IMG/VR virus record: IMGVR_UViG_3300046616_000314
Location: 62,001 to 126,000 of that record
Length of the DNA: 64,000 nt
Direction: 5' to 3' (one strand)
Below, one piece after another: positions 2,220 to 62,247 of the stretch; position 1 is the first letter of the stretch; every line of letters begins with the position of its first letter. The position numbers and the translations under genes were made by a program. The notes beneath the pieces were generated by a model. It searched no databases. It worked only from the letters and a program-made list of their open reading frames with translations, and was not told the origin of the DNA.

Positions 2220-2461
2220 TGAATTTTCGCCTGAAACTTGCCCCGGATTTGATTGATAGAGTTTATGGATGGGCGGCTGATAACCACTCATTCATAACTC
2301 TCCGGGTGAGTATGGCGTATAAGAAATACACGGTTAGTCCTGAAGCGATCAGAATAATTGTTGTCGGTCTTAAGAATGACGAAGAACAGATTTCACATTT
2401 TAAGCTGAAATTTTCAGACTATATTTTAAACGATGAATTAAATTATATAGGTAATAGATGA
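2219..2461 (+). CDS. FKLK-motif family small protein between nrdA and nrdB
   Basis: LKNDEEQISHFKLKFSD; overlaps both neighbours. Confidence 0.7.
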   Translation: MNFRLKLAPDLIDRVYGWAADNHSFITLRVSMAYKKYTVSPEAIRIIVVGLKNDEEQISHFKLKFSDYILNDELNYIGNR

Positions 2462-3558
2462 GCCAATACGACTTTAGTAAAGTACCCAATTACTTAAACC
2501 GACAAATGTTCCTTGATCCGGCTGGTGGTGTAACCGTCCAACGCTTTGAAGATTTCGCCTATCCCAAGGTTGCCAAGTTCGAAGAATTGGGTCGTAGCTT
2601 CTTCTGGAACCCCGAAGAAATCTCGCTGACCCAAGACAAGTCTGACCATAAGAACGTTTCCGAAGCGACTAAGTTCGTCTTCACGCAAAACCTTCTGCGT
2701 CAAACTGCCCTGGACAGCATTCAAGGTCGCGCTCCTGCGCAAATCTTTGGTCCGGTTGCATCTGTTCCTGAATTGGAAGCGATGGTTATGGCTTGGAGTT
2801 TCTTTGAAGGAAACATCCACTCGCGTAGCTACAGCCACATTATCCAGAACGTCTACAACGTCCCCAAGGATCAATTCAATACGATCCATGACACGTCGGC
2901 TATCATTGATATGGCTGCGTCCATCGGTCGTTATTACGAGCATCTTCACATTCTGAATTGCCGCAAGGAAGTCGGCATGACGGTGACTGAAGAGGAACAT
3001 ATTCGGGCTATTTGGATGGCTATGAACGCCTCTTACGCCCTGGAAGCTCTGCGCTTCATGGTGTCGTTTGCAACCTCATTGGCGATGGTTGAAAACCGCA
3101 TTTACATCGGCAACGGCAACATCATCAGCCTGATTCTTCAGGACGAATTGTTGCACACCGAATGGACTGCCTATCTGATCAATCAGGTAGTCAAAGACGA
3201 TCCTCGCTTTGCTAAGGCGAAGGCTGAAATGGCTGGCGAAGTTTACGCCATGTACCAAGAAGTCATCGGCGAAGAAAAAGCGTGGGCTGACCACTTGTTC
3301 CAAAAGGGCGTCGTGGTTGGTCTGAACCCAGAGATCATGAAGACTTTCGTGGATTACATTGCGACTTTGCGACTGAAAGAAATCGGTCTGAAGTACGTTG
3401 AACATCCGACGAAGGTCAACCCGATCCCTTGGTTCAACAAGCACATGAACACGTCGAAGAAGCAAACGGCTCTCCAAGAATCGGAAAGCACGAGCTACGT
3501 CATCGGCATCATGAGCACGAATATTAATTACGAAGAATTACCCGATCTGGATATGTAA
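2458..3558 (+). CDS. nrdB: Ribonucleoside-diphosphate reductase class Ia beta subunit
   Basis: Di-iron/tyrosyl motifs LDSIQGR, EGNIHSRSY, LEALRF, DELLH and C-terminal ESTSY. Confidence 0.97.
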   Translation: MSQYDFSKVPNYLNRQMFLDPAGGVTVQRFEDFAYPKVAKFEELGRSFFWNPEEISLTQDKSDHKNVSEATKFVFTQNLLRQTALDSIQGRAPAQIFGPVASVPELEAMVMAWSFFEGNIHSRSYSHIIQNVYNVPKDQFNTIHDTSAIIDMAASIGRYYEHLHILNCRKEVGMTVTEEEHIRAIWMAMNASYALEALRFMVSFATSLAMVENRIYIGNGNIISLILQDELLHTEWTAYLINQVVKDDPRFAKAKAEMAGEVYAMYQEVIGEEKAWADHLFQKGVVVGLNPEIMKTFVDYIATLRLKEIGLKYVEHPTKVNPIPWFNKHMNTSKKQTALQESESTSYVIGIMSTNINYEELPDLDM

Positions 3559-12615: not shown

Positions 12616-13313
12616 TCTACCATCTTGAACCCATCGGTGATTGGTCTACGGTAGCTGATGAAGATCGCTTTAGCGGTTTTCTAGACGGCGACCGCCGAGC
12701 ACTACATAATCCAAAGTGGCGCGGAAACGTGCGCGATGCTTTCCGTAATACATCGCACCAATACAATTTCTTTTTCCTTCAAGACGTAAAAGATCGTCGT
12801 TCAACGTACACGGCTAAATCTCTATTTGAAGTGAGTGATTACCTTCTTGACTATACATTCGATATGTCAGTACCAGACTCAATCAACGTGGTGTTCACGA
12901 ACAATTTCGGTACTGATCGCGTCGCAATGACACCCTGGATCATTGCTCATAGAACGTCGCACACAATCCACGAACACTTGGATGATGGCAAGGGTGTAGA
13001 ATACGTTCAAATATTACACGATATGTGTATTCATATCAAAAATATCAATAATTGCCATCATCGATTGAATAAAGACTTGCGCCAAGTCTTGAAATTCCGC
13101 AGCGCAAAGAAACAGCTTACGCGATATGGCGAATTGTTTCATGAAATATTCGCTCAATACTTGATACAAGGAAGCGTGACATTCATCAAACTCCCAAACA
13201 CCGTTCCTGATGCGGATGTAATCAATTCGATTACTAGAAAATATGCACCGAAGATCAATGCCTCTATCAAGAGACTATTAGATCAATCTGTTGGTAACAT
13301 TTATATTCTTTAG
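12612..13313 (+). CDS. Hypothetical protein with atypical zincin-like motif
   Basis: MTPWIIAHRTSH and ELFHEIFAQYL. Confidence 0.6.
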   Translation: MIYHLEPIGDWSTVADEDRFSGFLDGDRRALHNPKWRGNVRDAFRNTSHQYNFFFLQDVKDRRSTYTAKSLFEVSDYLLDYTFDMSVPDSINVVFTNNFGTDRVAMTPWIIAHRTSHTIHEHLDDGKGVEYVQILHDMCIHIKNINNCHHRLNKDLRQVLKFRSAKKQLTRYGELFHEIFAQYLIQGSVTFIKLPNTVPDADVINSITRKYAPKINASIKRLLDQSVGNIYIL

Positions 13314-14200
13314 TAATAGCCGTCGTCTTCGCGAGGATCGAAGACGCCTGGAACATAGATGTCATCCAATGCCAGACGCTTGACCATTTTGACATTGTGC
13401 AGCAACGGTTCGCCATCGGCTCCATCGTCTTCTAGCTCTGTTCCCTGGACAAGGAAGATATCGCGCTTACCCTTAGCGGTAGCCGAGAACAAACCGTCCA
13501 TCGTTCCATTGAGCGTGTTTTCATTGATGCCGTCCCCGATTGCCCAACGTTGTTCTTCCATTTCCCAATCGGCATGATAGGCGGATACGCCCTTTTCCCA
13601 CACCGGATGACCTTCTTCGCGAGAGGCTAGGAAATTCTGTGAACGTTCATCATCGCGCCATAGACCGAAACGAACATAATATCTGCCTAGCATGTAGGCT
13701 TTGTTTTCAGGCGTGAACATTTGTTTGACATATCGTCTTGCCAAATCAAGTGCGCCAGGAAGCGGAATAGAGATCAGTTCGCCACGATATGTGCCGCCCG
13801 TGTCTACGATATTGCCATCTAGATCGAAGACAACGCGCAGATGATCAGGTTCAGCTTTTGAACCACGATTGGGGTGATATGAGATAGCCGGGACGTTGTA
13901 GATAGCAAAAGTGTTCTTGTGCTTGTCTAGGTATTTTTGGACGGTTACTTGCGTCCAGCTACGCCAGCCAAAATAAGCATAGAATGCAAGCCACTCAGGG
14001 TTTTGCATTACCTTGCCTTCAATGCGCTTTAAGTCTGCCCCAGAGGGTGGCCACGTCTCAGGGGTGAAATCGGGCTTGCCTTCGGCATCCATTTGCGAGG
14101 ATGTCTTGTAGTGGGGAGCTAAGTCCTGCCAATAAGAACGCCCAACGTCTGTCGGATGCTCGCGATAATACTTTTCTTCAAACAGTTCTGACAGGCGCAT
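13310..14200 (-). CDS. Putative R-S-E type ADP-ribosyltransferase-fold protein with capsid-targeting-like N-terminus
   Basis: MRLSELFE; YVRFG..RS.N, EKGVSAY and GADGEPLL spacing suggests an R-S-E triad. Confidence 0.5.
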   Translation of the reverse strand: MRLSELFEEKYYREHPTDVGRSYWQDLAPHYKTSSQMDAEGKPDFTPETWPPSGADLKRIEGKVMQNPEWLAFYAYFGWRSWTQVTVQKYLDKHKNTFAIYNVPAISYHPNRGSKAEPDHLRVVFDLDGNIVDTGGTYRGELISIPLPGALDLARRYVKQMFTPENKAYMLGRYYVRFGLWRDDERSQNFLASREEGHPVWEKGVSAYHADWEMEEQRWAIGDGINENTLNGTMDGLFSATAKGKRDIFLVQGTELEDDGADGEPLLHNVKMVKRLALDDIYVPGVFDPREDDGYY

Positions 14201-42623: not shown

Positions 42624-43325
42624 ATGAAAAATATCATCGAAATTCGCTCCGCTGAAGGCGGGGCTGATTCAGCACTGTTCACAAAAGACCTTCTCAACGC
42701 ATATGTGCGTCTGTTCAACCGCAAGGGTTGAAAGTACCGCATCGTTCGTGAGAGACCGAGTGATGCAGGTTATAGCGAAATCGCCATCGAAGTTTCTGGC
42801 GATGATCTCACACCACTAAAAAATGAAGCCGGTGGACACCGAGTCCAGCGCGTGCCCGAAACGGAAGCCCGTGGGCGTGTTCACACGTCTACGGTAACTT
42901 GTGCCGTCTTAGATGTAGAAACTACAACGGACACCGATTCGATCTACTCGAAACGTAATCCCGATGATTTTGCCTATCGTTGGTATTCTGGCACAGGTAA
43001 AGGCGGACAAAAAAGAAACAAATCGCAATCGTGCTTAGAGCTAACTCATATTCCAAGTGGGTTATCTCAACAATCGCACGGTCGGTCACGGGAAGTGAAT
43101 TCTACACAAGCCATGACTGCCCTGATCGCAGATTTGGATTCCATGGCAAAAAACGCCAAAGCATCAATTGTTGCGGAAGATCGCAAAGGTCAAATCGGAT
43201 CGGGTATGCGCGGTGATAAACGCCGCACGTATCGTTTCCAAGATGGAACAATTACCGATCACGTCACCGGGCGTACTATTACAACGAAGGCATTTTCTAA
43301 GGGTAACTTAGACCTTCTTTGGTAA
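42624..43325 (+). CDS. prfA: Class I peptide chain release factor (RF1-like, no N-terminal domain 1) with in-frame UGA at codon 36 (42729-42731)
   Basis: ATG 42624 with SD; IEIRSAEGGADSALF..NRKG*KYRIV..NEAGGHRVQRVPETEARGRVHTS (PxT motif)..GTGKGGQ..RRTYRF..ITDH, all in one frame. Confidence 0.85.
42736..42770 (+). promoter_or_regulatory. Hairpin immediately 3' of the in-frame UGA (candidate readthrough stimulator)
   Basis: ACC-GCATC-GTTCG..CGAGT-GATGC-A-GGT: 13 pairs including two G-U, with one bulge. Confidence 0.5.
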
Positions 43326-43991
43326 TCGTCCCATGATCCATCCACTAGCGAGATAACTTTCCAACTCGCTAGTGGATACCATCATCGATTTCGTTTGGTT
43401 GTTTATCCATTTGCGTCCTGCATTGAAGGCGGGTTTTCCAAAATTAAAATGGGATGAACCAGATAGTTTTCGACTATGCGTGGCTCGCCATTCTGGTGGA
43501 TGAATTTTTCCGAACATCGGATTTTTATCACCCGTAAACCTGCCCTTTTTGCTTTGGGACATTTTATCACGAGATTCAGTAGAATGTGACTTTCCATACA
43601 TATGATGGTGGGTTCCACTGATTTTGCTTAAGCTATCAGAAGAATGTTTCTTACCGTAAAAGGGATTGTTTTTACCCATTGTAGATTTTTTTGCGGTATT
43701 GATAAATCTATCATATGCTCTAGCAGTAGGAGCATTTTCTTTCATACGACATAGCGCGTAGAACATTTTCGAACGAGCTTGTGGATTTTTTAATTTAGTC
43801 AGCAATACGTGTGCAATATAATGCTCTCTGGTCGTAAGATACACTAAGTTGTCTTTAGTATTAGGACCACCAAGGCTTTTTGGAATTATGTGATGGCGTT
43901 CTAAACCAGGAGCTTTAACCCGGTCCAATCGAATTGCATTATCTATAATTTTAGTATAGAGTTTTTTATACTTTATTTTTAGCCAAATCAT
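43308..43991 (-). CDS. HNH homing endonuclease with NUMOD3 DNA-binding repeats
   Basis: ERHHIIPKSLGG..DNLV.LT.REHYIAH; NPFYGKKHS, HMYGKSHS, NPMFGKIH repeats. Confidence 0.9.
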   Translation of the reverse strand: MIWLKIKYKKLYTKIIDNAIRLDRVKAPGLERHHIIPKSLGGPNTKDNLVYLTTREHYIAHVLLTKLKNPQARSKMFYALCRMKENAPTARAYDRFINTAKKSTMGKNNPFYGKKHSSDSLSKISGTHHHMYGKSHSTESRDKMSQSKKGRFTGDKNPMFGKIHPPEWRATHSRKLSGSSHFNFGKPAFNAGRKWINNQTKSMMVSTSELESYLASGWIMGRLPKKV

Positions 43992-44595: not shown

Positions 44596-44633
44596 AGAGA
44601 ATATCTAGCACAAAATTCGTTTTAGTCTAGTCA

Positions 44634-44639
44634 TAAATA
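44634..44639 (+). promoter_or_regulatory. T4-late-like promoter element TAAATA
   Basis: TAAATA-ATCG-ATG (gene start 44644). Confidence 0.7.
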
Positions 44640-44643
44640 ATCG

Positions 44644-46230
44644 ATGCGCTATCGTGACCTTCTCAAAGAATCTCCCCAGACTGGTTTTAAGCCCGGCTTT
44701 GAGCAATGGTTCGCGGGTTCTAAAGTCGTAGACAAATCCGGTCAGCCTTTGGTTTGCTATCACGGTACGTTCAGAGATTTTGCGGAATTCCAATATAACG
44801 ACAACGGTTGGGCGGGCTCTGGCTTCAATCGTCTAGGGTTCTGGTTCGATACCGATCCCAAGACCCCAGGCTGGCTTGCGGGCGACGAAGAGGGCTATGG
44901 CATCGGAGACGGTGGAAACATCAAGCCTTGCTATCTGTCGATCAAAAAACCTCTCGTCATGTCGGGTGACATGATCTGGAACGAGGACTTGGACGAGCTT
45001 CGTCAGCTTCGTAAAAATGTTTCAGCAACGTATGCGGCGCGGCGCGCAGCCAAGAACGGTGATTGGAACTTCGGACAATTAGACCTAACCTATCGCGATG
45101 CGTCGAGAGCATTTGACGCGGCTATGGAAAAGATGATGCAGAATGACGGTTGGACCCGGATCATGCGTCTTCTTCCGAACGGCATTAAGTCAACTACTGA
45201 GGAAGTCGCTGCGTTCCAGGCTGAATGCATCGCCGAAGGTTACGACGGTATTCATTTCGTGGATACGATGGCTGACTCAGGAACCCGTGACTATGCGCCT
45301 ACTGATTGGTGGTTGGCATTCCATCCAAATCAAATCAAGTCAGTCTTCGCTTCACAATTCAATCCACAGTCCACCAACATGAGCGAAGCTCAAGAGTTGG
45401 ATGAAATCATGGAAATCCCTGATTTTGACGATGACATCAACAATCAACGTCGTTCGCTGAATTGGGGAGAAAAAATTAAAGATTCCAAGAAAGTTGGAAA
45501 GATCGGACCCTATAATTTGGTCGTTCATCGCAGTGCTTGGGGTGATGAATATCTTTTGCTAGATAATCAGAAACACCCAATGGGCAAGGCGACTGTCTCA
45601 AAATATTCAGGTGGCTTCTATCGCGTCGGACACATTTGGTTTGATCCGACCGTCCGAGGCAAGGGCTACGGCTATTTGTTCTATCGTTTTCTGATCGACA
45701 AAGGCATGAAAGTCATCACTGACACCGATCAAACACGGTTCAGCCGAGGCGTGTGGTCTAAGCTGGCGCGCGAAGGTTTCGTGTATGAATATTTTGAAGA
45801 TGATACGCTAGGGTCCAAGGTTACGGACACCCAGGATTTCTACGGCAATCGTCTATCTAGATTGGCGGCTGTTAAGCCCGGCACGGTCAAAGAGAGTGCG
45901 CTTGTTGAGAAGACGATCTTCATTCCAGACTCATCGGGTATGAATTTCGTGGTAATGAAAAATCCGTCGAAGGCACAATATTTTAAATTGCTGCATCCCG
46001 ACTCAGACCTGAAGGGTTTGATTTCGGGCAAGGATTTCTATGTGTGGGCAGCATATCACGCTCACCATGGGCAGATTGCGCACGGGTTGGGTCTAGGCGA
46101 GGATGCGTATCGTATCTTTGTTCGATACAACGCGATCCTCGCTCATCCATCGTTGTTCCCGGCTATTCGAGATAATCCGCAGATGAAATATCTATATGGT
46201 CCGTCTGGACCGAATCTAGAAAGCGAGTAA
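44644..46230 (+). CDS. Polyvalent protein: ART-PolyVal-like ADP-ribosyltransferase + GNAT acetyltransferase + unknown domain
   Basis: WFAGSKVVDKSGQPLVCYHGT..GFWF..CYLSIKKP..GYDGI..AFHPNQIKS; GHIWFDPTVRGKGYG..TDTDQT..GVWSKL. Confidence 0.75.
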   Translation: MRYRDLLKESPQTGFKPGFEQWFAGSKVVDKSGQPLVCYHGTFRDFAEFQYNDNGWAGSGFNRLGFWFDTDPKTPGWLAGDEEGYGIGDGGNIKPCYLSIKKPLVMSGDMIWNEDLDELRQLRKNVSATYAARRAAKNGDWNFGQLDLTYRDASRAFDAAMEKMMQNDGWTRIMRLLPNGIKSTTEEVAAFQAECIAEGYDGIHFVDTMADSGTRDYAPTDWWLAFHPNQIKSVFASQFNPQSTNMSEAQELDEIMEIPDFDDDINNQRRSLNWGEKIKDSKKVGKIGPYNLVVHRSAWGDEYLLLDNQKHPMGKATVSKYSGGFYRVGHIWFDPTVRGKGYGYLFYRFLIDKGMKVITDTDQTRFSRGVWSKLAREGFVYEYFEDDTLGSKVTDTQDFYGNRLSRLAAVKPGTVKESALVEKTIFIPDSSGMNFVVMKNPSKAQYFKLLHPDSDLKGLISGKDFYVWAAYHAHHGQIAHGLGLGEDAYRIFVRYNAILAHPSLFPAIRDNPQMKYLYGPSGPNLESE

Positions 46231-46354
46231 CCGCTTCCTTTTCTTTGCGTTCCTTGATGCGTTCCTGAACGATGCGTAAGAAGCCCAGGTAGGCAAGAAA
46301 AATAAAGAAAGCAGCGAGCAAGATGAGATCAACGGTTTGCGTAGAGATTTGCAT
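46163..46354 (-). CDS. Small membrane protein
   Basis: One hydrophobic helix. Confidence 0.5.
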   Translation of the reverse strand: MQISTQTVDLILLAAFFIFLAYLGFLRIVQERIKERKEKEAVTRFLDSVQTDHIDISSADYLE

Positions 46355-46484: not shown

Positions 46485-47174
46485 TCATTCACGAACATCC
46501 AAGGGACGCTTTACATCCCATCGTTGCGGCAAGAACTTCGGTTGCATCGTCTTTACGAAATGCTCGCGCCAGCGCACGGTGAACGGGTAGTAATCTTCGT
46601 TCAGCATTTGAACCACGCGCTCAGCCCAATCGAATTTCATATCAGGGTTGAATGGTAGCGCGGCGATAGCTTCGATTCGAGCACGACGCTCGTCATCCAT
46701 GTAATGACTGTAGTTCGCAAGCGTACGCTTAGCACGTTCGATTTCGCGGTTTTGGTTCGCGGCGCGTTGCAAATCGTGGAATGCTACACCCAAATATTCC
46801 AGACATACTTCTTGGCGCAAGTCATCGCCCATGCGCTCGTAGGTATGATGGCAGTCATCGCACACCACCAGCAAATCATGATGCGAGTGTGACTTATATT
46901 TTTCAGGGAAGAACCGGCGGAAGCAATACGGGATCACGTGATGCCGGGTTAGGTTTTCTTCCGAGCCACAGACTACGCATTGGTTCTTGAAATTCTGCAT
47001 GTAATAGGGATCGTCTTGAGCCCCTACCCCGCCGGGTTCAAACAGCAGCTTGAAAATTTTATCGGTTTCCCAGGTAGCCAGACCCTTGCGGGTGTACCAA
47101 TCGGCACGCGCGCTATCTACGTTGCAAAGATGCGACCCATCTGGCGCCAGCATTTTATATGATTCGTAAATCAC
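46485..47174 (-). CDS. HNH-like protein resembling the C-terminal domain of eukaryotic EXD2
   Basis: MLAPDGSHLC..ADWY..KGL..LLFEP..YY..NQCVVCG..RHHVIPYC.R..FP..KSH.HHD..CDDCH; start moved to the GTGA overlap. Confidence 0.7.
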   Translation of the reverse strand: MIYESYKMLAPDGSHLCNVDSARADWYTRKGLATWETDKIFKLLFEPGGVGAQDDPYYMQNFKNQCVVCGSEENLTRHHVIPYCFRRFFPEKYKSHSHHDLLVVCDDCHHTYERMGDDLRQEVCLEYLGVAFHDLQRAANQNREIERAKRTLANYSHYMDDERRARIEAIAALPFNPDMKFDWAERVVQMLNEDYYPFTVRWREHFVKTMQPKFLPQRWDVKRPLDVRE

Positions 47175-47389
47175 AGGAACAAAACCTTCAGACCATACAC
47201 CACCCATATCACATAGGCGGCGGTGACGAAAATCCAACTTCCGATAATTAATCGGGCTTGGCTGTAAAATTCATCGTTGTGAGGCTTTGGGAAGCCCTTC
47301 AGGAGGGTTCGGAGGCGGAATGAACCCACGAGTAGCCCAAGACCTAAAAGGGTCGTAGCGAGGATTAGAAAGCCTTGTAGGAGGATCAT
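47171..47389 (-). CDS. Small membrane protein
   Basis: Two hydrophobic helices. Confidence 0.6.
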   Translation of the reverse strand: MILLQGFLILATTLLGLGLLVGSFRLRTLLKGFPKPHNDEFYSQARLIIGSWIFVTAAYVIWVVYGLKVLFL

Positions 47390-50816: not shown

Positions 50817-50844
50817 AATGTACCACGGTCTTAGGCGTTGTCAA
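50817..50844 (-). promoter_or_regulatory. sigma70-like promoter
   Basis: TTGACA-N16-TACATT with TGG before the -10 box. Confidence 0.7.
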
Positions 50845-52529
50845 TAGTCCAAGAAATCATCAAGCGTCTTCGTATATACGGTTGGACCAAATGCACTAAC
50901 CTTGTCGAGTATTGGAACAAGACCCGCAAAGTCGGCTCTCTTATAATTGCCAGCTTCCAAGCATGATCTGATCAACAAATCAAATTTGTCTCTTGAGAAA
51001 CCTTGCTTAGCACCCTCAATAATCAATGCATAAAGGAATTGCAACGATCTATCGCCAAAGAATCGACGCGCATGACTATGTGCTTGTGACCAAAAGCCAA
51101 TTAACTCTTTGGGATCGGTACAAGCCGTCATGACGGTAGATTGGTGATTATATAGCAGATACTTGAAATATTCGGGATTTTCGCGCACATACTTCACAGG
51201 ATCGATTGTTCTATTCCACCAAATACTTAACAGGTGTGCTCGTTGACCGGGCTCAAGGAAATCGGCAGCCAATATCTTAGCCATCAATTCTTGAGTCATA
51301 TGGAAATCTCGTTTACCGAGTTGGTACACGGTGTCATCGGCATTGTCCTTCAACTGTTGAAGATATTCTTCATCAGTGAACGGAATCAAATTGTACGGAT
51401 AAGCCCAGGCGAAATATTTTTCCTTGATTTCGTCCTGAATAGATACGGGAAGAATACCCCAACCGAGTGTTGTAAAAATGCTCACGTGAGAGCCTTCTAG
51501 AACATCGCGGACCAACTTAAGTTCTTCTGGTGTAAATTTACCGCCTTGTTGATATCGCTTGGTAAGAAATTTCTTTAGGGCAAGCGGATTGTCAATATAC
51601 ATATCAACAGGTGTCGGAGTACGATCAACAAGGCGCCGATTACGGATGACATCTACCTCGCGCAAGCCTTTCTTAGAGAAAAACAGTGCTTGAACAGGTT
51701 CATTGGTGTGGATGATACCTTCACCCTCGACATCAACGCAACCATCGTAGCCTAACTGCATGAACAGTTTCGACCAACGAGTTGTCAGCTTGATACCATA
51801 TTCGCGGCGTTGAGCACGAATCGCATCAACAACATTTTCTTTACCGAAACTCAGCAATTCTTTCCAGATCGGTGAGTCCATTGTAGTTTTGTGGACCGCG
51901 TTGTAAGTTGCAATTTTATCGTCAAGGTCTTCTAGACTCTTGACTTGATTGAAATTCAACGGATACCAATATTTGTTAACATACATTTGAATTGGCGTAG
52001 CGTGTGCCATTTGAAAATCATCCGTGTCACTTGCTAGTTCACGTGTGATATTCCAAATCATACCACCAGCCGATTTATTAGTCGCTGAATTTTTCGCTTT
52101 TTCTACGATATGCTTGAATCGAAATTCATAATTTTCATTCTTGACGATAATATCGTGTAGCTTACGAACGTCTTCGTCCATTTGTCTCTCTGTATAAAGA
52201 GAGAAATCAATCATGTTCCCGGTTGCCTGAACAACGTACATATAGGCACGATCTTTGGCGAACGGAACATTGCCTTGTGCCATAAGAACGTAATCAACGG
52301 GATAGACATAGATACCCAGAGGCGTACCGTAGCTATAAGTCGGATTGATACCGATCTTTGTGCCTTTTGTATGGGGAGATTTGTTTCTCACCATCCCTTG
52401 ATCCATGCTGTCAACGAACGAGACAAACATAGTCGGATCATTCGCATATTGCTTCAGTTCTTCAAGGCTATCGATTTTTTTGTTGATATGGGCGTTACGA
52501 CGCTTTTCAAACAATTCAAAAGCGCGCAT
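50841..52529 (-). CDS. RRNP-family protein 1 (putative packaged ART-fold effector)
   Basis: MRAFELFE; FVSF, KIGINP..TPLGIYVYP, LGYDG.VD..GIIH.NEP.QA.FF. Confidence 0.7.
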   Translation of the reverse strand: MRAFELFEKRRNAHINKKIDSLEELKQYANDPTMFVSFVDSMDQGMVRNKSPHTKGTKIGINPTYSYGTPLGIYVYPVDYVLMAQGNVPFAKDRAYMYVVQATGNMIDFSLYTERQMDEDVRKLHDIIVKNENYEFRFKHIVEKAKNSATNKSAGGMIWNITRELASDTDDFQMAHATPIQMYVNKYWYPLNFNQVKSLEDLDDKIATYNAVHKTTMDSPIWKELLSFGKENVVDAIRAQRREYGIKLTTRWSKLFMQLGYDGCVDVEGEGIIHTNEPVQALFFSKKGLREVDVIRNRRLVDRTPTPVDMYIDNPLALKKFLTKRYQQGGKFTPEELKLVRDVLEGSHVSIFTTLGWGILPVSIQDEIKEKYFAWAYPYNLIPFTDEEYLQQLKDNADDTVYQLGKRDFHMTQELMAKILAADFLEPGQRAHLLSIWWNRTIDPVKYVRENPEYFKYLLYNHQSTVMTACTDPKELIGFWSQAHSHARRFFGDRSLQFLYALIIEGAKQGFSRDKFDLLIRSCLEAGNYKRADFAGLVPILDKVSAFGPTVYTKTLDDFLDY

Positions 52530-54418
52530 TAGAATACTCCCTCATCATCGTCGGCTTCAGCCCGATCAGTTTCAAACTTGAGCATTTCCATCACGTTGTT
52601 GAGACCAAGCTTTTCAGCACGATCATAGACGGTTGCCCAATACTTGTTCAGACCTTCCATGCGGTCGGACTGACGAATTTCAGGATGAGTGCGAGCCATT
52701 TCTTCATTGATCAAATGAATCAAGTTTGAAATCTGACCCTGTTGGCAATCATTTGCGTATAACAACAGAGAACCCATCCAAGCGGGAGTACGATCAGCCA
52801 AGCTAACAATGTCGTATACATTGCGTTTGACGAATTGGTAATACTTCATGAAGTCTTGAGGCGTGCGGCGTTGACGCAGGAATGCCATAAGAATCGGTTG
52901 GCTAATCTTATAAATGTTGCCATTGAACAGCCCCGGTTTGCTTCCAATGAAATCAAAGATCATCTTCTGGTGATTGACGATGCCCTGATTGACAATCCCG
53001 GCGATAAGATCAGCCGAGGCGCGGGCATCGTTCACGACTGCCTCAAAGACATGCGGGCGACGTAGAATAGCTCTATAAAAACCCTTGGCGTGTCCACTGA
53101 AGTAATGTGGATCGAAGTTTTGCTGATAGTTCAAAACCTGATTGACCATTTGTTTATCTGTGAAGTCAATCGCATCCAACGGGAAACCAATTCGTTCCCA
53201 GTGTTCGCGAACATAGGACTTCACTTCAGCAGGGAACATCGGATAGATGTCGGCAAATACTTCATTGTCATGATTATAGCCGATGACTTCGGTCATCATC
53301 TTGATTTCGTCGGGAGTATACTCGCCCTTGTGCTTATGAATCCATGCCTTGAACAGCTTAGGCTTTTCAATGAAAATCGTAGTCTGACCTTTTGGCTTCT
53401 CGTGCTGGACGTTGTTGAGGACTTCCAATTCTTGGATACCAGCCTTGGAGAAGAACACGGCTTGAGTGGGTTCATTCTCGTGAATAATTCCCTTACCTTG
53501 TAGGTCAGATGCTCCCGAATAGCCAAGGTCACGGAATAGTTTAGACCAATTGGCGATGCCCTTGGTGGATTGGATGCGCCGGAATTCTTCGACCGCAGCC
53601 AATACTTGTTCCGGTGTAGCCTTATTCAGAGCGTCTACAGCACCTTTGAAGTTTACTTCAAGCAACTCACGAATGGTCATCGGCGTTTTTTCAGTCGCCA
53701 CGGATGATTGTCGGTTGAATGCTGCTTTATATTTTTCAACGTCTTCGGCTGTCTTGAGCGTAGAAGAATGAGGAATTAGCTTACGATCATTCGGCGGAAT
53801 ACCGGTTTCAAAATCAGCACTCTTCCATGTCGCCGAAATCAGCATATTCATAGGCGAACGCTGATTGTACATGCCATGGCGCCGCCCTGACAACAGGCGA
53901 GTCAAATTCCAAATCTTCCCACCAGGGGTTCTAGATGTTGAAGTAGAATCAGCAAGTAATTGCATTTCTTGAAATTGCGTATCGCTCATGAGGTTCATGG
54001 CTCGCAACTTTGCGGCATCCTTGTCGTAGTCTTCTTGCGAATACGTGTGTAAGTCCAACACATTACCGCGCGCCTTGACGACATACAGGTATGGGCGTTT
54101 CGCAGCGAAAGGAACGTCGTTGACAAATTTCTTCAAAACGTAATCGACCGGATAGCAGTAGATACCCACCGGGGTATTGTAATTGGTCTTCGGGTTGATG
54201 CCGATCTTAGAGCCGCGTTGGTTCGCCAGTGTTCCCTTGGAACGAATACCGCCAAACGTTTCGTCACCGATGCTGCGAAGAGAGTGCGCGCCGACATCAT
54301 GCGTGAACGAAACGTACACGTCGGGATGACCTTCATATTTTCGCAAGGCATCGATAGCGGAAACCTTGGGATTCAGGTCTGGATTTCGACGTTTCTCGAA
54401 TAGTTCAAATGCGCGCAT
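52529..54418 (-). CDS. RRNP-family protein 2 (putative packaged ART-fold effector)
   Basis: MRAFELFEKRRNP; same conserved motifs. Confidence 0.7.
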   Translation of the reverse strand: MRAFELFEKRRNPDLNPKVSAIDALRKYEGHPDVYVSFTHDVGAHSLRSIGDETFGGIRSKGTLANQRGSKIGINPKTNYNTPVGIYCYPVDYVLKKFVNDVPFAAKRPYLYVVKARGNVLDLHTYSQEDYDKDAAKLRAMNLMSDTQFQEMQLLADSTSTSRTPGGKIWNLTRLLSGRRHGMYNQRSPMNMLISATWKSADFETGIPPNDRKLIPHSSTLKTAEDVEKYKAAFNRQSSVATEKTPMTIRELLEVNFKGAVDALNKATPEQVLAAVEEFRRIQSTKGIANWSKLFRDLGYSGASDLQGKGIIHENEPTQAVFFSKAGIQELEVLNNVQHEKPKGQTTIFIEKPKLFKAWIHKHKGEYTPDEIKMMTEVIGYNHDNEVFADIYPMFPAEVKSYVREHWERIGFPLDAIDFTDKQMVNQVLNYQQNFDPHYFSGHAKGFYRAILRRPHVFEAVVNDARASADLIAGIVNQGIVNHQKMIFDFIGSKPGLFNGNIYKISQPILMAFLRQRRTPQDFMKYYQFVKRNVYDIVSLADRTPAWMGSLLLYANDCQQGQISNLIHLINEEMARTHPEIRQSDRMEGLNKYWATVYDRAEKLGLNNVMEMLKFETDRAEADDDEGVF

Positions 54419-54428: not shown

Positions 54429-56219
54429 TTAGTCCATTTTATGCGCGTCACCGTAAACTTGCGTCACCGGATTTGCTTGATGAATTGCTCGCTTGATCTC
54501 ATCTACATACTTGGGAGCATGAGCCGTAGTCCATGCAAGCAAATTGTTCCACCATGCGCCTTCGTCAGTCGGATGATATGAGAATGCGGGTTCCGAACTG
54601 CGAAGCATATTGGTAACGAGTTGGTCATAGCCTTTGCTCATAGCATATTGAAGACAGCCCATAAGGAAAGTTGGTCCCTTGGCAGATATACCGCTGGAAA
54701 CTAGGGCTCGTTCGACCATTTTACCGATTTCGACAAAGGTTTCCGGGTCTTCAATTCGGCGCATTCCCACTGTTTGAGCAAATGGTGACATTTTGGAGAA
54801 TTCTTCTTTATTATTCTTTATGAACTGATTGACGGCTTCGGTATTTTTAACAATTGACGCCAGTTCGTAGAATACTAAGCTCTTATTACCAGCCGACATA
54901 TAATTTTTGTTCTTTGATTGCATCAAATACAAGAACGTTTCAGGCGTAATGACAAACTTGTCAATTTTGTTGAGAAGGCTTGGGTTACGCATGACCTGAT
55001 AAGCAATCTCGTGTTGCGTCAAGCCAGGAACACATTTGGGATCGAACACACCCTCATACCAGCGAACACGAATATCCTTGCGAATTGATTCGGGAAGCAG
55101 GTTCCAATTGATTACGCGAATAGCTTCTGGGTTCTCCCAAATGAAACTATTAATCAGGTTAACTTCTTCTTCGTTGAATGGCTTGCGGCTATGCTTCTCT
55201 AGATATTTGGCGAACTTCAAATAATCGTAGTACCATTCGGTATCAACGCGATACGGCTTGTGCGAATAGGTGATGTTGTGGATAGTCTCGACTTCACTGA
55301 AGCTTTTCTTATTGAAGAACAACGCTTGTGTGGGTTCGTTCTGGTGAATGATACCATCACCATTATCGATCAGACCATCATAGCCTAGACCTTGGAAAAC
55401 TTTGGACCATCGGGTTGTTGGTTTAGAACCCGAAATGGCACGGAACTTATTCGCGATCTCCGCAAACTCTTCTGGTGACGTGTTTTCGAATTGATCGTAC
55501 ATGCCATTTTGACGAAGGCTGTCACGGAAATTTGTGAGCAACGCTTTCTTCAACGCAACGCCAGTACGATCAGCGATTACTTCCTTATAAGACCACGGTG
55601 AATTCAAATAAATCTTGGCGATGAATTCGTGTAGGCCATCGGTGTATCGCAAATGTTGTGCTTCGAAGGTAGGAAACTCGCGGCAGATGTTGAAGAAATA
55701 TCCGCCAGGAGATTGCACTTTGGCTTCGTAACTGGCTCGATTTACAAACTCTTTCCAGTCATCGTCATCAACGTCTGGAACGTCGGCTTGCAATGCGGCG
55801 CAATCGTTCTCTAAATCATCTTGAGAATACTTTTGTAGATCAAGCATGTTGCCCGTAGAGCGAATGACCTGAATGTATGGACGGTCGGCAGCATAGGGAA
55901 CATCCGGTTCACCGCTGCTTCGATCAAGTACGTAAGAAATTGGGTAGGCGTAGATACCTAGAGGCGTGCCGTGGTCATATTTCGGATTGATGCCGATCTT
56001 GGAGCCGCGCGAGTTATGGCTTTTGCCTTTGGCGTTGATGCCCGTTCCGGTGTTGTACGGTTCAGCGGCAACGTCAGGATTGGATTTCGTACCAACATCA
56101 TCGGTGAAACTGACGTAAACGTCATCGCGACCCTTGTACTTCTTTAAGGAGTCCAGGGCAGAAACCTTGGGGTTCTGTTCGGGATTACGTCGGGCTTCAA
56201 GGATTTCGTATGCGCGCAT
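54429..56219 (-). CDS. RRNP-family protein 3 (putative packaged ART-fold effector)
   Basis: MRAYEILEARRNP; same conserved motifs. Confidence 0.7.
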   Translation of the reverse strand: MRAYEILEARRNPEQNPKVSALDSLKKYKGRDDVYVSFTDDVGTKSNPDVAAEPYNTGTGINAKGKSHNSRGSKIGINPKYDHGTPLGIYAYPISYVLDRSSGEPDVPYAADRPYIQVIRSTGNMLDLQKYSQDDLENDCAALQADVPDVDDDDWKEFVNRASYEAKVQSPGGYFFNICREFPTFEAQHLRYTDGLHEFIAKIYLNSPWSYKEVIADRTGVALKKALLTNFRDSLRQNGMYDQFENTSPEEFAEIANKFRAISGSKPTTRWSKVFQGLGYDGLIDNGDGIIHQNEPTQALFFNKKSFSEVETIHNITYSHKPYRVDTEWYYDYLKFAKYLEKHSRKPFNEEEVNLINSFIWENPEAIRVINWNLLPESIRKDIRVRWYEGVFDPKCVPGLTQHEIAYQVMRNPSLLNKIDKFVITPETFLYLMQSKNKNYMSAGNKSLVFYELASIVKNTEAVNQFIKNNKEEFSKMSPFAQTVGMRRIEDPETFVEIGKMVERALVSSGISAKGPTFLMGCLQYAMSKGYDQLVTNMLRSSEPAFSYHPTDEGAWWNNLLAWTTAHAPKYVDEIKRAIHQANPVTQVYGDAHKMD

Positions 56220-59925: not shown

Positions 59926-61510
59926 CTTCGGTACCTGTCAATCCATAACGAGAAAGTTGTAATATCTGTTCGGCACGTTCGTCTTTGCCATAGGTGAGAC
60001 GGAGGACACCTAAAACTTTAGAGCGAATTTGCGCACTACGAGAACTAATATGAGCGTATTCAGTGAGAATATCATTGAAATACGCCAGAGTAATGTAATC
60101 ATGCTTATCGATGATCACTGAAGCAACTGACCGGAGCCAACTATACTCATCGTCTCGCAATAGTAATTCGCGAGCAAATAGTTCTGGAATAGTATTGCTA
60201 TGAATAAAACTATGAAGCATTTGCGCATACTCGCGCGGATTCGTGATATTCGAGATAGCACGGGTTTTGACAACATTCGGGAAGAATCGAATGAATGTCG
60301 AATGATCCTTCAGAAATTTTAACGAATCAAATTCGAAATCGGCTCCACATTCAACCGCGAGTGTTTTAAATCTGCCCGTCTTCTGACTATTGTCCAGCAC
60401 TTCTTTTGCAAATGTATCGAGTAATTGCACGTATTGTTGGCGTGTAATAAGCGGTTTCATGAAACGGGTCATGATCCAAGGTTCTTCAGCCACGGCGGCG
60501 AAGATTTCTTCTGGTGATACGTTAGGTAGGTAATACGGATAGATGACGTTGACTGCCCACGAATCTTTCAACCACTGTTGAATAATGGTCGGCACGTTTT
60601 TCCAATTGAATTGGAGGTTGTCTAGGAATGTATCATCGGAACGGAAATCACCAATGTAATCCATGATCTGAGTGTTCTCAGTCTCATTGGTATTACCTTT
60701 ACGATTATTAAGAAACTTGAAGAATGAATTTTGGTTCTTCAACCAGATGTCATATAGCGATGGGGTTCTTTTGGGAGCGGGTGTGTTGTGAATGACTTCG
60801 ACAACCCGGAAGGATTTTTTACTAAAGAACAACGCTTGGTTGGGCTCGTTTTTGTGAATGATCCCATAGCCAGGATCAACCAGACCGGCGTATCCAAGTT
60901 GACTGAAGATACGTGACCACCGAGTTGTCATCTTGGCTTGTACGGCAGATTTTTCCGCTGTTTTCTTATCGAGTGCAAACATGCGAGTGATGTTGAACAT
61001 CTTACCCGCCCACGTGTCTGTAGAAGCGTTATATTCGCCATCATCGATAATGTGTTCATCGTCATAACCGAGAGCCTTCAGCTTCTCGATATCTTCGTTC
61101 ATGTCGCGTTCTGTATACAGTTCAAAATCCAGCATCTTGCCGGTTGGTTCCAGAACGTAAATGTATGGACGCTCGCCAGCGAAAGGAACTTTCACTTCTA
61201 CAGCAGAAGAATTTTTCAAGACATAATTGACGGGGTAGGCGTAGATACCCAAAGGCGTACCATAACCGTATGTAGGGTTGATCCCAATCTTAGGTCCGCG
61301 AGCATTGTGGACATGACCTTTGGCTCTTACGCCATCTTCGGTCTTTTTAACTTTTTGATTGCCTGCATTGTTGGCAGATAGAACGCCGACATCGGCAGTG
61401 AACGATAGAAACACGTCTTTGTCTGTGTACTTGCGCAGTTGTTTCATAACCGGAGCCTTCTGATTTTGTTCAGGATTCCGGCGGGCTTCGATCAGTTCAT
61501 GAAAACGCAT
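59918..61510 (-). CDS. RRNP-family protein 4 (putative packaged ART-fold effector)
   Basis: MRFHELIEARRNP; start moved to the TAATG overlap at 61510. Confidence 0.7.
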   Translation of the reverse strand: MRFHELIEARRNPEQNQKAPVMKQLRKYTDKDVFLSFTADVGVLSANNAGNQKVKKTEDGVRAKGHVHNARGPKIGINPTYGYGTPLGIYAYPVNYVLKNSSAVEVKVPFAGERPYIYVLEPTGKMLDFELYTERDMNEDIEKLKALGYDDEHIIDDGEYNASTDTWAGKMFNITRMFALDKKTAEKSAVQAKMTTRWSRIFSQLGYAGLVDPGYGIIHKNEPNQALFFSKKSFRVVEVIHNTPAPKRTPSLYDIWLKNQNSFFKFLNNRKGNTNETENTQIMDYIGDFRSDDTFLDNLQFNWKNVPTIIQQWLKDSWAVNVIYPYYLPNVSPEEIFAAVAEEPWIMTRFMKPLITRQQYVQLLDTFAKEVLDNSQKTGRFKTLAVECGADFEFDSLKFLKDHSTFIRFFPNVVKTRAISNITNPREYAQMLHSFIHSNTIPELFARELLLRDDEYSWLRSVASVIIDKHDYITLAYFNDILTEYAHISSRSAQIRSKVLGVLRLTYGKDERAEQILQLSRYGLTGTEDA

Positions 61511-62247
61511 TAAATTTTCTCCGCAACGGAGAAGAAATTGCTTCCATCTTTTTTGAGTAATTTCAGATCGGTCTTGAGCATACGCCAGCATTCGGAAGGA
61601 TGGATCGTCCCCGCATGGGCGACGTGCATACCACGGTTGATCGCTTCGATCTTCAAATGATCGGGCATCTTCTTCAGCACACGTTTGCCGCCTTGAGCGA
61701 AGTAAGCGTACTCGCCATCAAGAACACGTTTGCGTTGATTTTCGGTCATGCTCCAACCGATGTAATCGTACAGTTGTCTACCGGCATAATCTGATTGCGG
61801 CAGAGAACATTTATAACCAACGGTGACGGGATGCCCATAGCGACCCATTTGTGTGATGGGCTCAGAATTGTGGCTATAAAATTCACCGATGGAATCTTCG
61901 TCAGGCTGCACGTCTACGAGATCGGCGCCTTTGATAACGAACACATATCCATAAGGATCGGTTCGCATATCGTCTTTGAAATCGCCAGCGGCTTCTTGCA
62001 TGGCATGAGTAAAATTGCCACCAAGGGCATACATGATGGCGTATGCGATATCGGATGTAATATAGACGCGCCCGGCAACAGGAGCAAGCATACCCTTGCC
62101 TTGGGTCTCGCGACCTTTCAGACCTTCGGTAGCAACGACATTGGCTGCACGAGTCGATGACGTGCCGTGATAGTACGTTTTTGCACGAACGTTATCGTCC
62201 GGTGCAGCCTCGTCAATTTCGGTACCAAATAATTCGTGAAAACGCAT
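61510..62247 (-). CDS. H-Y-type ADP-ribosyltransferase-fold protein with capsid-targeting-like N-terminus
   Basis: MRFHELF..IDE; YYHGTS..EGL..VYITSDIAYAIMYA..YVFVI..PDED. Confidence 0.65.
   Translation of the reverse strand: MRFHELFGTEIDEAAPDDNVRAKTYYHGTSSTRAANVVATEGLKGRETQGKGMLAPVAGRVYITSDIAYAIMYALGGNFTHAMQEAAGDFKDDMRTDPYGYVFVIKGADLVDVQPDEDSIGEFYSHNSEPITQMGRYGHPVTVGYKCSLPQSDYAGRQLYDYIGWSMTENQRKRVLDGEYAYFAQGGKRVLKKMPDHLKIEAINRGMHVAHAGTIHPSECWRMLKTDLKLLKKDGSNFFSVAEKI

What the first reader, a model, noticed from the sequence alone, without database searches (positions are those of the whole stretch)
44644..46230. Effector polyprotein: ART + GNAT + unknown domain separated by head-protease-like sites
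The domain boundaries coincide with clusters of (L/I/M/V)-x-E motifs: LLKE|S at the start, MSE|AQELDE|IME between ART and GNAT, and VKE|SALVE|K before the third domain. Inference: one late gene is packaged and cut by the prohead protease into three separate injected enzymes.
Basis: partly seen in the sequence, partly recalled or inferred. Interest (0 to 1): 0.65.

Follow-up and report, generated by a model that had tools for sequence, protein, structure and literature searches.

The report
Capsid-targeted three-module phage effector protein
A giant (561 kb) T4-like phage encodes a late protein that joins an ADP-ribosyltransferase, an acetyltransferase-like domain and an unnamed third module. 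It carries a short N-terminal tag that, in a related phage, marks proteins found in the virion, and head-protease-type cut sites conserved at every module boundary, so it is probably loaded into the capsid, trimmed and perhaps cut apart, and injected with the DNA.

Summary
The quoted (L/I/M/V)-x-E clusters sit in the N-terminus and the two low-confidence linkers.

- Late gene: a T4-type late-promoter motif (ATAAATA) lies 4 nt before the ATG. The same motif precedes portal, protease, terminase and virion genes.
- Protease: the genome has a T4 gp21-type (S77) protease. The scaffold-like neighbour is the genome's most [LIMV]xE-rich protein.
- Leader: the N-terminus MRYRDLLKE belongs to a leader class (M-R-x3-4-h-h-x-E) shared by about 18-26 proteins here and by most homologues elsewhere.
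- Virion link: in related phage Atu_ph07, 20 of 24 such leader proteins are in the published virion proteome (p 5e-13), including a D2 homologue.
- Boundary sites: E254 is [LIVM]xE in 36/36 aligned D2 domains, and the same motif precedes most D3 copies. Stand-alone D2 and D3 proteins carry the leader where the fusion has its linkers.

Cleavage itself is not shown, and D3 has no recognisable enzyme fold. ART+GNAT polyvalent proteins and T4 Alt/CTS processing are known. The leader class, the D3 family and protease-site-bounded modules look new.

The parts
44632..44639 (+). Late-promoter-type motif CATAAATA, ending 4 nt before the ATG. This spacing would give a leaderless or near-leaderless mRNA.
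   Evidence: Sequence read. ATAAATA is the most enriched upstream 7-mer of the genome (61 genes, 17x). It precedes portal, protease, TerL and virion structural genes. The motif is depleted elsewhere: 8 in the window against 21.8 expected.
44644..46230 (+). Single CDS of 528 aa (P0001), with no internal late motif and no internal start signal.
44644..44670 (+). N-terminal leader MRYRDLLKE (res 1-9), like a T4 capsid-targeting sequence and ending in L-K-E.
   Evidence: Shared pattern in about 18-26 proteins of this genome and in most homologues from other contigs. In Atu_ph07, 20 of 24 leader proteins are virion proteins.
44698..45378 (+). ART-PolyVal ADP-ribosyltransferase domain (res ~19-245); H40, Y97 and D201 are conserved.
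   Evidence: Pfam PF18760 E 3e-19. Invariant residues in alignment A1. The H-Y-D active site of this clade is described in PMC5512222.
45379..45405 (+). Linker 1 (res 246-254): MSE, AQE and LDE. E254 is the family-invariant [LIV]xE just before the first strand of D2.
   Evidence: pLDDT 57-65 for res 236-255. E254 column 36/36 in A5 and 97/98 over all instances. The segment aligns with the N-terminus of stand-alone D2 proteins.
45406..45876 (+). D2: divergent GNAT-fold acyltransferase-like domain (res 255-411) with R338-G-K-G341-Y-G343.
   Evidence: Homologues pass the Pfam Acetyltransf_1 cut-off. Model pLDDT 90.7. All top 50 Foldseek PDB hits are GNATs. R338 and G341 are nearly invariant.
45877..45909 (+). 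Linker 2 (res 412-422): VKE|S and LVE|K.
   Evidence: The first 8 residues of the D3 model have pLDDT 67. [LIVM]-[KN]-E-S follows D2 in 8 of 12 homologues with a C-terminal extension. [LI]xE precedes D3 in stand-alone and repeated copies.
45910..46227 (+). D3: unnamed alpha/beta module (res 423-528); invariant N440, P441, W468, H475.
   Evidence: Alignment A4. Model pLDDT 91.7. No Pfam, NCBIfam, PHROG or PDB match. Paralogues in the same genome.
46221..46246 (+). Terminator-like hairpin plus T-rich tail straddling the stop codon.
   Evidence: Consensus scan only; weak evidence.

Best explanation
The gene encodes a late-expressed cargo ('polyvalent') protein of a T4-like megaphage of the Rak2/Atu_ph07 clade.

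Proposed mechanism:
1. The 9-residue leader MRYRDLLKE works like a T4 capsid-targeting sequence and takes the protein into the prohead core.
2. The gp21-type prohead protease removes the leader after L-K-E9.
3. The protease probably also cuts in the two disordered linkers, after E248/E251/E254 and after E417/E422.
4. This would release an acidic ART of about 27 kDa (H-Y-D type), a basic GNAT-fold acyltransferase of about 19 kDa, and a 12-kDa D3 module.
5. The pieces are ejected with the DNA and modify host targets early in infection, in the way shown for T4 Alt on RNA polymerase.

Shown: the domains, motifs, promoter motif, protease gene, family-wide conservation of the boundary motifs, and the association of the leader with virions in a relative.
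Inferred: packaging of this particular protein, every cleavage, ejection, and the targets.

My separate odds: packaged about 0.7; N-terminal trimming about 0.65; cut into separate modules about 0.45-0.5.
For: Late-type motif shared with structural genes, also found upstream of homologues on other contigs.

Protease and its likely specificity:
- S77 protease PF03420, E 5.5e-27, in a head module with gp23-type capsid protein and portal.
- The adjacent 415-aa coiled-coil protein has 33 [LIMV]xE against 14 expected, the top value of 875 proteins.
- The capsid protein N-terminus carries LFE, LCE, MME, VLE and LME before the conserved core.

Leader class:
- Together with the 4-6-nt promoter spacing: 26/42 against 102/833, Fisher p 4e-13.
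- In Atu_ph07 the leader predicts virion proteins, OR 29, p 5e-13. A conservative symmetric control gives OR 7.1, p 4e-10.
- Atu_ph07 gp672, a D2-family homologue with the leader, is in virions.
- Some Atu_ph07 leader proteins run far below their predicted size (87 kDa mostly in the ~22-kDa band).

Modules and boundaries:
- Each module exists alone and in other fusions.
- The fusion's linkers align with the leaders of the stand-alone forms.
- Boundary [LIV]xE motifs are conserved and lie in low-pLDDT segments.

Precedent: T4 gp21 cuts after L/I-X-E; a 10-aa CTS suffices for packaging; Alt is a packaged ART trimmed at both ends (PMC9026906; PMC3012670).
Against: - There is no proteomic or biochemical datum for this phage or this protein.
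- The total motif count is only marginally above the genome background (p 0.06).
- P1' after the invariant E254 is I or V in 90/98 instances and starts the first beta-strand, so this conserved motif could be structural.
- The M-S-E after the ART domain is conserved in proteins that end 2-4 residues later.
- Most Atu_ph07 leader proteins run at full size, so internal cutting is not the rule.
- The Atu_ph07 ART-like virion protein is only a sub-threshold match.
- The protease's specificity is inferred, not measured. Its phiKZ relatives use S/A-X-E instead.
Confidence: 0.5

Rival explanations
1. The protein is packaged and trimmed only at the N-terminus. It enters the host as one 58-kDa three-domain polyvalent effector. 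The conserved [LIV]xE at the internal boundaries are leftovers of the leaders of formerly separate genes, or structural caps of the domains.
For: - Polyvalent proteins are generally thought to be delivered as multidomain chains (PMC5512222).
- E254 is followed by a conserved I/V that starts a strand.
- Most Atu_ph07 leader proteins run at their predicted size.
- The paralogue ART+D3 (375 aa) shows that ART and D3 recur together, which could mean they act as one unit.
Against: - The boundary motifs stay conserved in deep internal copies, for example 7-10 D3 repeats in one chain, where no start codon has existed for a long time.
- They lie in low-confidence segments rather than in the packed core.
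- Some leader proteins of Atu_ph07 do appear as much smaller species.
Confidence: 0.27
2. The protein is not packaged. It is a late cytoplasmic enzyme that modifies host or phage components in the producing cell. The N-terminal leader then serves another purpose, such as translation of leaderless mRNA, stability, or localisation.
For: - In this genome the leader class coincides with a promoter motif only 4-6 nt from the ATG and with ATG-CGC as the first codons, which could point to a translation-initiation constraint.
- The gene lies about 230 kb from the head module.
Against: - In Atu_ph07 the same peptide leader is encoded behind ordinary Shine-Dalgarno leaders 19-21 nt long, and those proteins are in virions.
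- Codons 3-9 vary synonymously while the peptide pattern is kept.
- Internal domain copies keep the [LIV]xE part without any start codon.
Confidence: 0.13
3. The motif clusters are a by-product of acidic, helix-prone linkers and have no function.
For: Linker 1 is very acidic (pI 4.05). hydrophobic-x-E is 13% commoner than composition predicts across the whole proteome.
Against: Column-specific conservation: 36/36 at E254, and only the boundary columns recur. The distance of the motif to the N-P of D3 peaks sharply at 17-19 residues.
Confidence: 0.06

Closest known systems
Phage T4 Alt (packaged ADP-ribosyltransferase)
   Same: A late-made ART, incorporated into the prohead, trimmed by the gp21 protease after L/I-X-E (N-terminal 7-residue propeptide and a C-terminal cut), and ejected with the DNA to modify host RNA polymerase (PMC9026906; PMC5512222). 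The protein here has a 9-residue leader ending L-K-E, and the genome has a gp21-type protease.
   Different: A different ART clade: H-Y-D ART-PolyVal here against the R-S-E Alt/VIP2 clade. The protein here is fused to a GNAT and D3. No experimental data exist for it.
Polyvalent proteins with neighbouring ART and GNAT domains (Iyer et al. 2017, PMC5512222)
   Same: Phage-encoded multidomain proteins combining disparate activities. [quoted passage not shown] One homologue found here adds Acb1 (anti-CBASS) to ART and D2.
   Different: That work proposes processing by in-built zincin-like metallopeptidases. This protein has no peptidase domain. Its modules are instead bounded by prohead-protease-type sites and it carries a CTS-like leader. 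D3 matches none of the Pfam models, LPD families included.
T4 internal proteins IPI-III and their capsid-targeting sequence
   Same: A short N-terminal peptide ending in a protease site is the only feature shared by otherwise unrelated cargo proteins (PMC3012670; PMC9026906). Here 18-26 unrelated proteins share the leader. The leader proteins of this phage and of Atu_ph07 are not homologous beyond the leader.
   Different: The consensus is M-R-x-x-x-h-h-x-E with E at residue 8 or 9, not the T4 sequence. The class is much larger here, and it includes large multidomain enzymes.
Inner-body and ejection proteins of phiKZ, 201phi2-1 and SPN3US
   Same: Giant phages whose gp21-related protease cuts many head proteins after glutamate, often at several redundant sites in a propeptide.
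   Different: A different phage lineage and a different motif (S/A-X-E). There, propeptides are removed rather than enzyme modules separated.

Membership tests
ART-PolyVal (Pfam PF18760; Tox-ART-HYD2-like clade) | Profile match above the curated cut-off | tested here: met
   70.6 bits against 31.2, E 3e-19, res 30-238 covering profile positions 1-137 of 140.
ART-PolyVal (Pfam PF18760; Tox-ART-HYD2-like clade) | Active site: His in strand 1, Tyr in strand 2, Asp in strand 5 (PMC5512222) | tested here: met
   H40 (Y-H-G-T), Y97 and D201 (E-G-Y-D-G) are invariant among the four closest homologues. H40 and D201 are also invariant in the two paralogues. Their assignment to strands was not checked on a model.
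ART-PolyVal (Pfam PF18760; Tox-ART-HYD2-like clade) | NAD+-dependent ADP-ribosyl transfer | not testable with these tools
   Needs an enzyme assay.
GNAT acyltransferase superfamily | Profile match above the curated cut-off | tested here: inconclusive
   P0001 itself scores 15.9 bits against the 20.7 cut-off. Homologues of the same domain pass: P0009 32.6, P0016 25.2, P0013 24.0, P0015 23.4 bits.
GNAT acyltransferase superfamily | GNAT fold | tested here: met
   Model pLDDT 90.7. All top 50 Foldseek PDB matches are GNATs, best E 5e-5, but TM-scores are only 0.26-0.41, so the domain is divergent.
GNAT acyltransferase superfamily | Acyl-CoA pyrophosphate-binding loop Q/R-x-x-G-x-G/A | tested here: met
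   R338-G-K-G341-Y-G343. R338 and G341 are at least 90% conserved in A5. That this loop defines the family is established knowledge, not tested here.
Polyvalent proteins (Iyer et al. 2017) | Two or more domains of disparate biochemical activity in one phage or plasmid polypeptide | tested here: met
   ART + GNAT + D3 in one ORF of a 561-kb virus record.
Polyvalent proteins (Iyer et al. 2017) | Delivered into the host with the DNA | not testable with these tools
   Indirect support only: the leader class is enriched in Atu_ph07 virions.
Polyvalent proteins (Iyer et al. 2017) | In-built processing peptidase (a common theme, not obligatory) | tested here: not met
   No peptidase family in Pfam, PHROGs or NCBIfam.
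T4-type CTS-bearing, gp21-processed head cargo | Short N-terminal peptide ending in L/I-x-E | tested here: met
   M-R-Y-R-D-L-L-K-E9; the leader class is described.
T4-type CTS-bearing, gp21-processed head cargo | gp21-family (S77) prohead protease in the same genome | tested here: met
   PF03420, 92.8 bits; phrog_207, E 8e-61.
T4-type CTS-bearing, gp21-processed head cargo | Found in the head and cleaved at the predicted bond | not testable with these tools
   No proteome for this phage and no RNA or protein data.
T4 Alt/ModA/ModB family | R-S-E ART of the Alt/VIP2 clade | tested here: not met
   The domain is ART-PolyVal (H-Y-D), and no Alt-type family was reported by Pfam. It works like Alt but is not a member.

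The most novel reading that the evidence does not exclude
In the Rak2/Atu_ph07 clade of giant phages, an 8-9-residue leader (M-R/K-x3-4-h-h-x-E) together with flanking [LIV]xE prohead-protease sites may form a general cassette system.
- Dozens of unrelated cargo modules (ART, GNAT, Acb1, the D3 family and many unknowns) would be interchangeable units.
- They are encoded either as solo genes or strung into polyproteins, with up to 7-10 D3 copies in one chain.
- Capsid maturation would then double as polyprotein processing that loads a cocktail of separate effectors for injection.
- In this phage the cargo genes would additionally form a regulon of leaderless late mRNAs.
Probability: 0.35. Interest if true: 0.8.

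Novelty: new variant of a known kind. Interest (0 to 1): 0.62.

Why it matters
If the reading is right, the cargo that giant T4-like phages inject could be read straight from sequence as leader plus protease-site-bounded modules. That would give a candidate list of about 20-40 early-acting effectors per genome, nearly all of unknown function, including a widespread unnamed module (D3).

It would also change the picture of polyvalent proteins. Instead of one large multi-tool protein, or self-processing by its own peptidase, the head maturation protease would act as a polyprotein processor.

The leader could serve as a packaging tag for engineering cargo into jumbo-phage capsids, as the T4 CTS has done.

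All of this can be tested with existing phages (Atu_ph07, Phosso) and even with existing mass-spectrometry data.

Tried and rejected
- Composite full-length alignment (A3). MAFFT placed a third of each D2 fragment onto D3, so it was discarded and no full-length model was made. Contacts between domains are therefore unknown.
- Phage database. No DNA match for the region, and only two weak ART hits by tblastn.
- Word-based protein search with the whole protein found ART homologues only. The domain search was needed to find D2 and D3.
- D3 function.
  - Foldseek against PDB gave nothing (best E 0.13).
  - VIA-align best Z was 5.0, below the noise level stated by the tool.
  - Weak recurring NFACT-R/CCDC25/Rqc2 similarity (Z 3.7-4.0; atlas TM 0.50) and TM 0.64 to an 'RHS repeat-associated' cluster are recorded as leads only.
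  - The ESM-atlas feature search, the PDB profile search, NCBIfam and PHROGs gave nothing.
  - A basic DNA-binding role is not supported: pI ranges from 4.6 to 9.0 across the family.
- Expression data. Only DNA metagenome runs hold the region (rhizosphere metagenome).
- Internal promoters or starts that could make D2 or D3 separately: none. There is no HTAAATA inside the gene, V415 is GTC, and M246 has no upstream signal.
- Homology between this phage's leader proteins and Atu_ph07 virion proteins: none beyond the leader.
- A gp55-type late sigma factor was not identified (one search was inconclusive).
Full report
THE OBJECT. window:44644-46230(+) is one uninterrupted ORF of 528 aa. The window is G000:C1:62001-126000 of a 561,116-bp virus record that CheckV rates 97% complete. 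The capsid protein is 80.9% identical to that of Sinorhizobium phage Phosso (469 kb) and 67.5% to Agrobacterium phage Atu_ph07 (490 kb). This places the phage in the Rak2/Atu_ph07 group of T4-core jumbo phages. The only run holding the region in full is a rhizosphere metagenome.

DOMAINS.
- Res 30-238 match ART-PolyVal (PF18760, E 3e-19, well above the cut-off). H40, Y97 and D201 are invariant among the closest homologues. This fits the H-Y-D active site described for the clade (PMC5512222).
- The middle part matches GNAT only weakly by itself (15.9 bits against 20.7).
- An exhaustive search with res 240-528 found 148 relatives. Stand-alone homologues of the middle domain (165-185 aa) pass the Acetyltransf_1 cut-off.
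- The AlphaFold model of res 236-425 is confident (pLDDT 90.7). All of its top 50 PDB neighbours are GNATs, though at modest TM-scores.
- The CoA-binding loop R338-G-K-G-Y-G343 is kept.
- The third module, D3 (res 423-528), also folds confidently (pLDDT 91.7, beta-beta-alpha-beta-beta-alpha-beta-beta-alpha-alpha-beta). It has invariant N440, P441, W468 and H475. It matches nothing in Pfam, NCBIfam, PHROGs, PDB sequences or PDB folds.
- D3 is widespread. It occurs as stand-alone 95-130-aa proteins, as tandem arrays (7 copies in a 1060-aa protein, at least 7 in a 2722-aa one) and next to ART or D2.
- Four D3 carriers lie in this genome: the target, a 375-aa ART+D3 paralogue, a 983-aa protein and a 152-aa solo protein.
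- D3's function is open. I would not call it an enzyme on present evidence.

THE MOTIFS.
- As a simple count they are weak: 10 against 5.05 in shuffles, and p 0.06 after correcting for the genome-wide excess.
- Their placement is not weak. Five of the ten glutamates lie in the 44 residues outside the modelled domains (p 7e-4). These segments have low model confidence: 57-65 for res 236-255 and 67 for res 415-422.
- The decisive point is conservation.
  - In the alignment of 36 D2 domains, the E254 column is the only one where [LIVM]xE occurs in every sequence. Over 98 instances, E is present in 97.
  - After D2, 8 of 12 homologues that continue carry [LIVM]-[KN]-E-S.
  - In 109 D3 copies, 86 motifs end 15-22 residues before the N-P, peaking at 17-19. 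This includes every repeat of the long arrays, typically as L/I-x-E followed by A, G, S, K or Y.
- The linkers of the fusion align with the N-terminal leaders of the stand-alone proteins. 'E-L-D-E-I-M-E-I-P-D-F-D-D-D' lines up with 'M-R-I-D-E-I-N-L-I-P-D-F-G-D-D'. 'V-K-E-S-A-L-V-E-K-T-I' lines up with 'M-R-L-S-E-I-L-K-E-H-T-I'.

THE PROTEASE AND ITS LIKELY SPECIFICITY.
- The genome encodes an S77 (T4 gp21-type) prohead protease (PF03420, E 5.5e-27). It sits in a head module with a gp23-type capsid protein and the portal.
- The 415-aa coiled-coil protein between protease and capsid gene has 33 [LIMV]xE (14 expected) at 11-14-residue spacing. It is the most motif-enriched of 875 proteins. That is what a gp22-like scaffold degraded at L/I-x-E would look like.
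- The capsid protein has five such motifs before its conserved core.
- T4 gp21 cuts after L/I-X-E, whereas phiKZ-type relatives prefer S/A-X-E (PMC9026906). The internal calibration favours the T4-type rule here, but the specificity remains an inference.

LATE EXPRESSION.
- The most enriched upstream 7-mer in the genome is ATAAATA (17-fold), the core of the T4 late promoter TATAAATA. The T4 consensus is from my own knowledge.
- [ACT]TAAATA lies 21-52 nt upstream of the portal, protease, large terminase and virion structural genes.
- It lies 3-7 nt (mostly 4-6) upstream of 42 other genes, the target among them (CATAAATA-atcg-ATG).
- The motif is avoided elsewhere: 8 in the window against 21.8 expected.
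- Homologues on other contigs carry it too.
- The short spacing predicts leaderless late mRNAs. This is untested.

THE LEADER.
- MRYRDLLKE is one of a family of N-termini (M-R-x3-4-h-h-x-E, with E at residue 8 or 9) on 18-26 proteins of this genome. These include both ART paralogues and three large paralogues in the window.
- The leader and the short promoter spacing go together (Fisher p 4e-13).
- Of 151 homologues from other metagenomes that start with Met (of 155 listed), 69 start with M-R and 101 have [LIMV]xE within about 15 residues.
- This resembles the T4 capsid-targeting sequence. That is a 10-residue N-terminal peptide ending in the protease site, sufficient for packaging, and the only feature shared by otherwise unrelated internal proteins.

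EMPIRICAL LINK TO VIRIONS.
- I mapped the published Atu_ph07 virion proteome (supplementary Table S5 of PMC6102473) onto the ORFs of MF403008.1 by molecular weight and gene order. This placed 131 proteins.
- Twenty of the 24 ORFs matching ^M[RK].{3,6}[LIMV].E are virion proteins (odds ratio 29, p 5e-13).
- A symmetric control that allows any alternative start codon still gives OR 7.1, p 4e-10.
- All 20 have E at residue 8.
- One of them, gp672, is a D2-family homologue (hmmsearch 1.4e-6; hhalign 87%), although it lacks the CoA loop.
- Another, gp381, has a sub-threshold ART-PolyVal N-terminal half.
- In Atu_ph07 these genes have ordinary Shine-Dalgarno leaders. The peptide is therefore not a by-product of leaderless initiation.
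- Gel-band data show that a few leader proteins run far below predicted size: gp53 at 87 kDa lies mostly in the ~22-kDa band, gp482 at 31.7 kDa in the ~15-kDa band, and gp63 at 41 kDa in the ~29-kDa band. The 30-kDa paralogues run at size. Internal cutting therefore happens to some cargo proteins, not all.

WHAT IS KNOWN ALREADY.
- ART-PolyVal next to a GNAT in phage polyvalent proteins is published, as is the idea that such proteins are packaged and injected, with T4 Alt as the model (PMC5512222; PMC7824862).
- A homologue found here even adds the anti-CBASS enzyme Acb1.
- T4 Alt is trimmed at both ends by gp21.
- I did not find three things described in the held library (a limited search): the leader class in this clade, the D3 family, and module boundaries marked by prohead-protease-type sites in place of an in-built peptidase.

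VERDICT.
- Late expression and packaging with N-terminal trimming are likely.
- Separation into three pieces is plausible, at roughly even odds.
- 'Three enzymes' overstates what is known about D3.
- The strongest caveat is that the conserved E254 is followed by a conserved I/V that begins a strand, so it could be structural. The M-S-E after the ART domain is also conserved in proteins that end there.
The gene is intact, and it is a phage effector aimed at bacteria.

Noticed in passing
window 50841-52529(-), 52529-54418(-), 54429-56219(-); also 13310-14200(-) and 61510-62247(-): Three large paralogues (562, 629 and 596 aa) start MRAFELFEKRRN or MRAYEILEARRN. Two further proteins also belong to the leader class. 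ATAAATA lies exactly 4 nt before the ATG of four of the five; none was found before the 562-aa gene. They have no Pfam hit, and the three large paralogues also have no PHROG hit. They are candidate capsid cargo of unknown function.
   Followed up: partly
whole genome G000; in the window 14205, 44633, 54423, 56224, 62252: A class of 42 genes has the late-type motif [ACT]TAAATA only 3-7 nt from the start codon and no Shine-Dalgarno sequence. This predicts leaderless late mRNAs, and about 20 of these genes begin ATG-CGC/CGT. The motif is otherwise depleted (8 in the window against 21.8 expected).
   Followed up: partly
G000:C1:336284-337531(-), outside the window: A 415-aa coiled-coil protein between the prohead protease and the capsid gene carries 33 [LIMV]xE at about 11-14-residue spacing, the highest enrichment in the genome. 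It is a likely gp22-type scaffold and a useful internal calibrator of protease specificity.
   Followed up: partly
P0018 (L026:1924-5106), P0010, P0044, P0045 (other metagenomic contigs): The D3 module occurs as tandem arrays of 3-10 copies in proteins of 700-2700 aa. Each copy is preceded by L/I-x-E. These look like polyproteins that multiply one small module.
   Followed up: partly
P0012 (L025:5001-8243): A 1080-aa homologue joins Acb1 (anti-CBASS, PF23474), ART-PolyVal and the D2 GNAT-like domain in one chain. This ties the module set to counter-defence.
   Followed up: no
G000:C1:545926-547053(-) and 293578-294777(+), outside the window: Two ART paralogues occur in the same genome, both with the leader. 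One is ART+D3 without the GNAT (375 aa; L-D-E-K at the junction). The other has a 180-aa N-terminal extension and ends I-S-E-T-S-R-K right after the ART domain.
   Followed up: partly
window 43308-43991(-) and 46485-47237(-): The target gene is flanked on both sides by opposite-strand ORFs whose sequences read like HNH-type homing endonucleases (H-H-I-I-P...N...H, and C-x-x-C...H-H-V-I-P...C-x-x-C-H). This is read from the sequence only and was not checked against profiles.
   Followed up: no
window 42852-43325(+): A 157-aa ORF contains a G-G-Q motif in a context reminiscent of the peptidyl-tRNA-hydrolase domain of release factors (RF-1/ArfB-like). An RF-1-domain gene also lies near the homologue P0012 (L025). 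Not checked.
   Followed up: no
window 46163-46354(-): A 63-aa ORF with a hydrophobic stretch lies on the opposite strand and overlaps the last 68 nt of the target gene. It may be a small membrane protein or a shadow ORF.
   Followed up: no
window 3-2219(+), 2458-3558(+): Class Ia ribonucleotide reductase large and small subunits (phrog_84, phrog_86) lie at the left end of the window.
   Followed up: no
Atu_ph07 MF403008.1, about 32.1-50.6 kb (gp43, gp47, gp53-gp63): A block of genes holds about ten ~30-kDa proteins, all starting M-R/K-W-x-Q-L-x-E, plus larger members (gp53, 87 kDa), and gp43 and gp47 with related leaders. All are in the published virion proteome. They are apparently an expanded cargo family that the original paper lists as hypothetical proteins.
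   Followed up: partly
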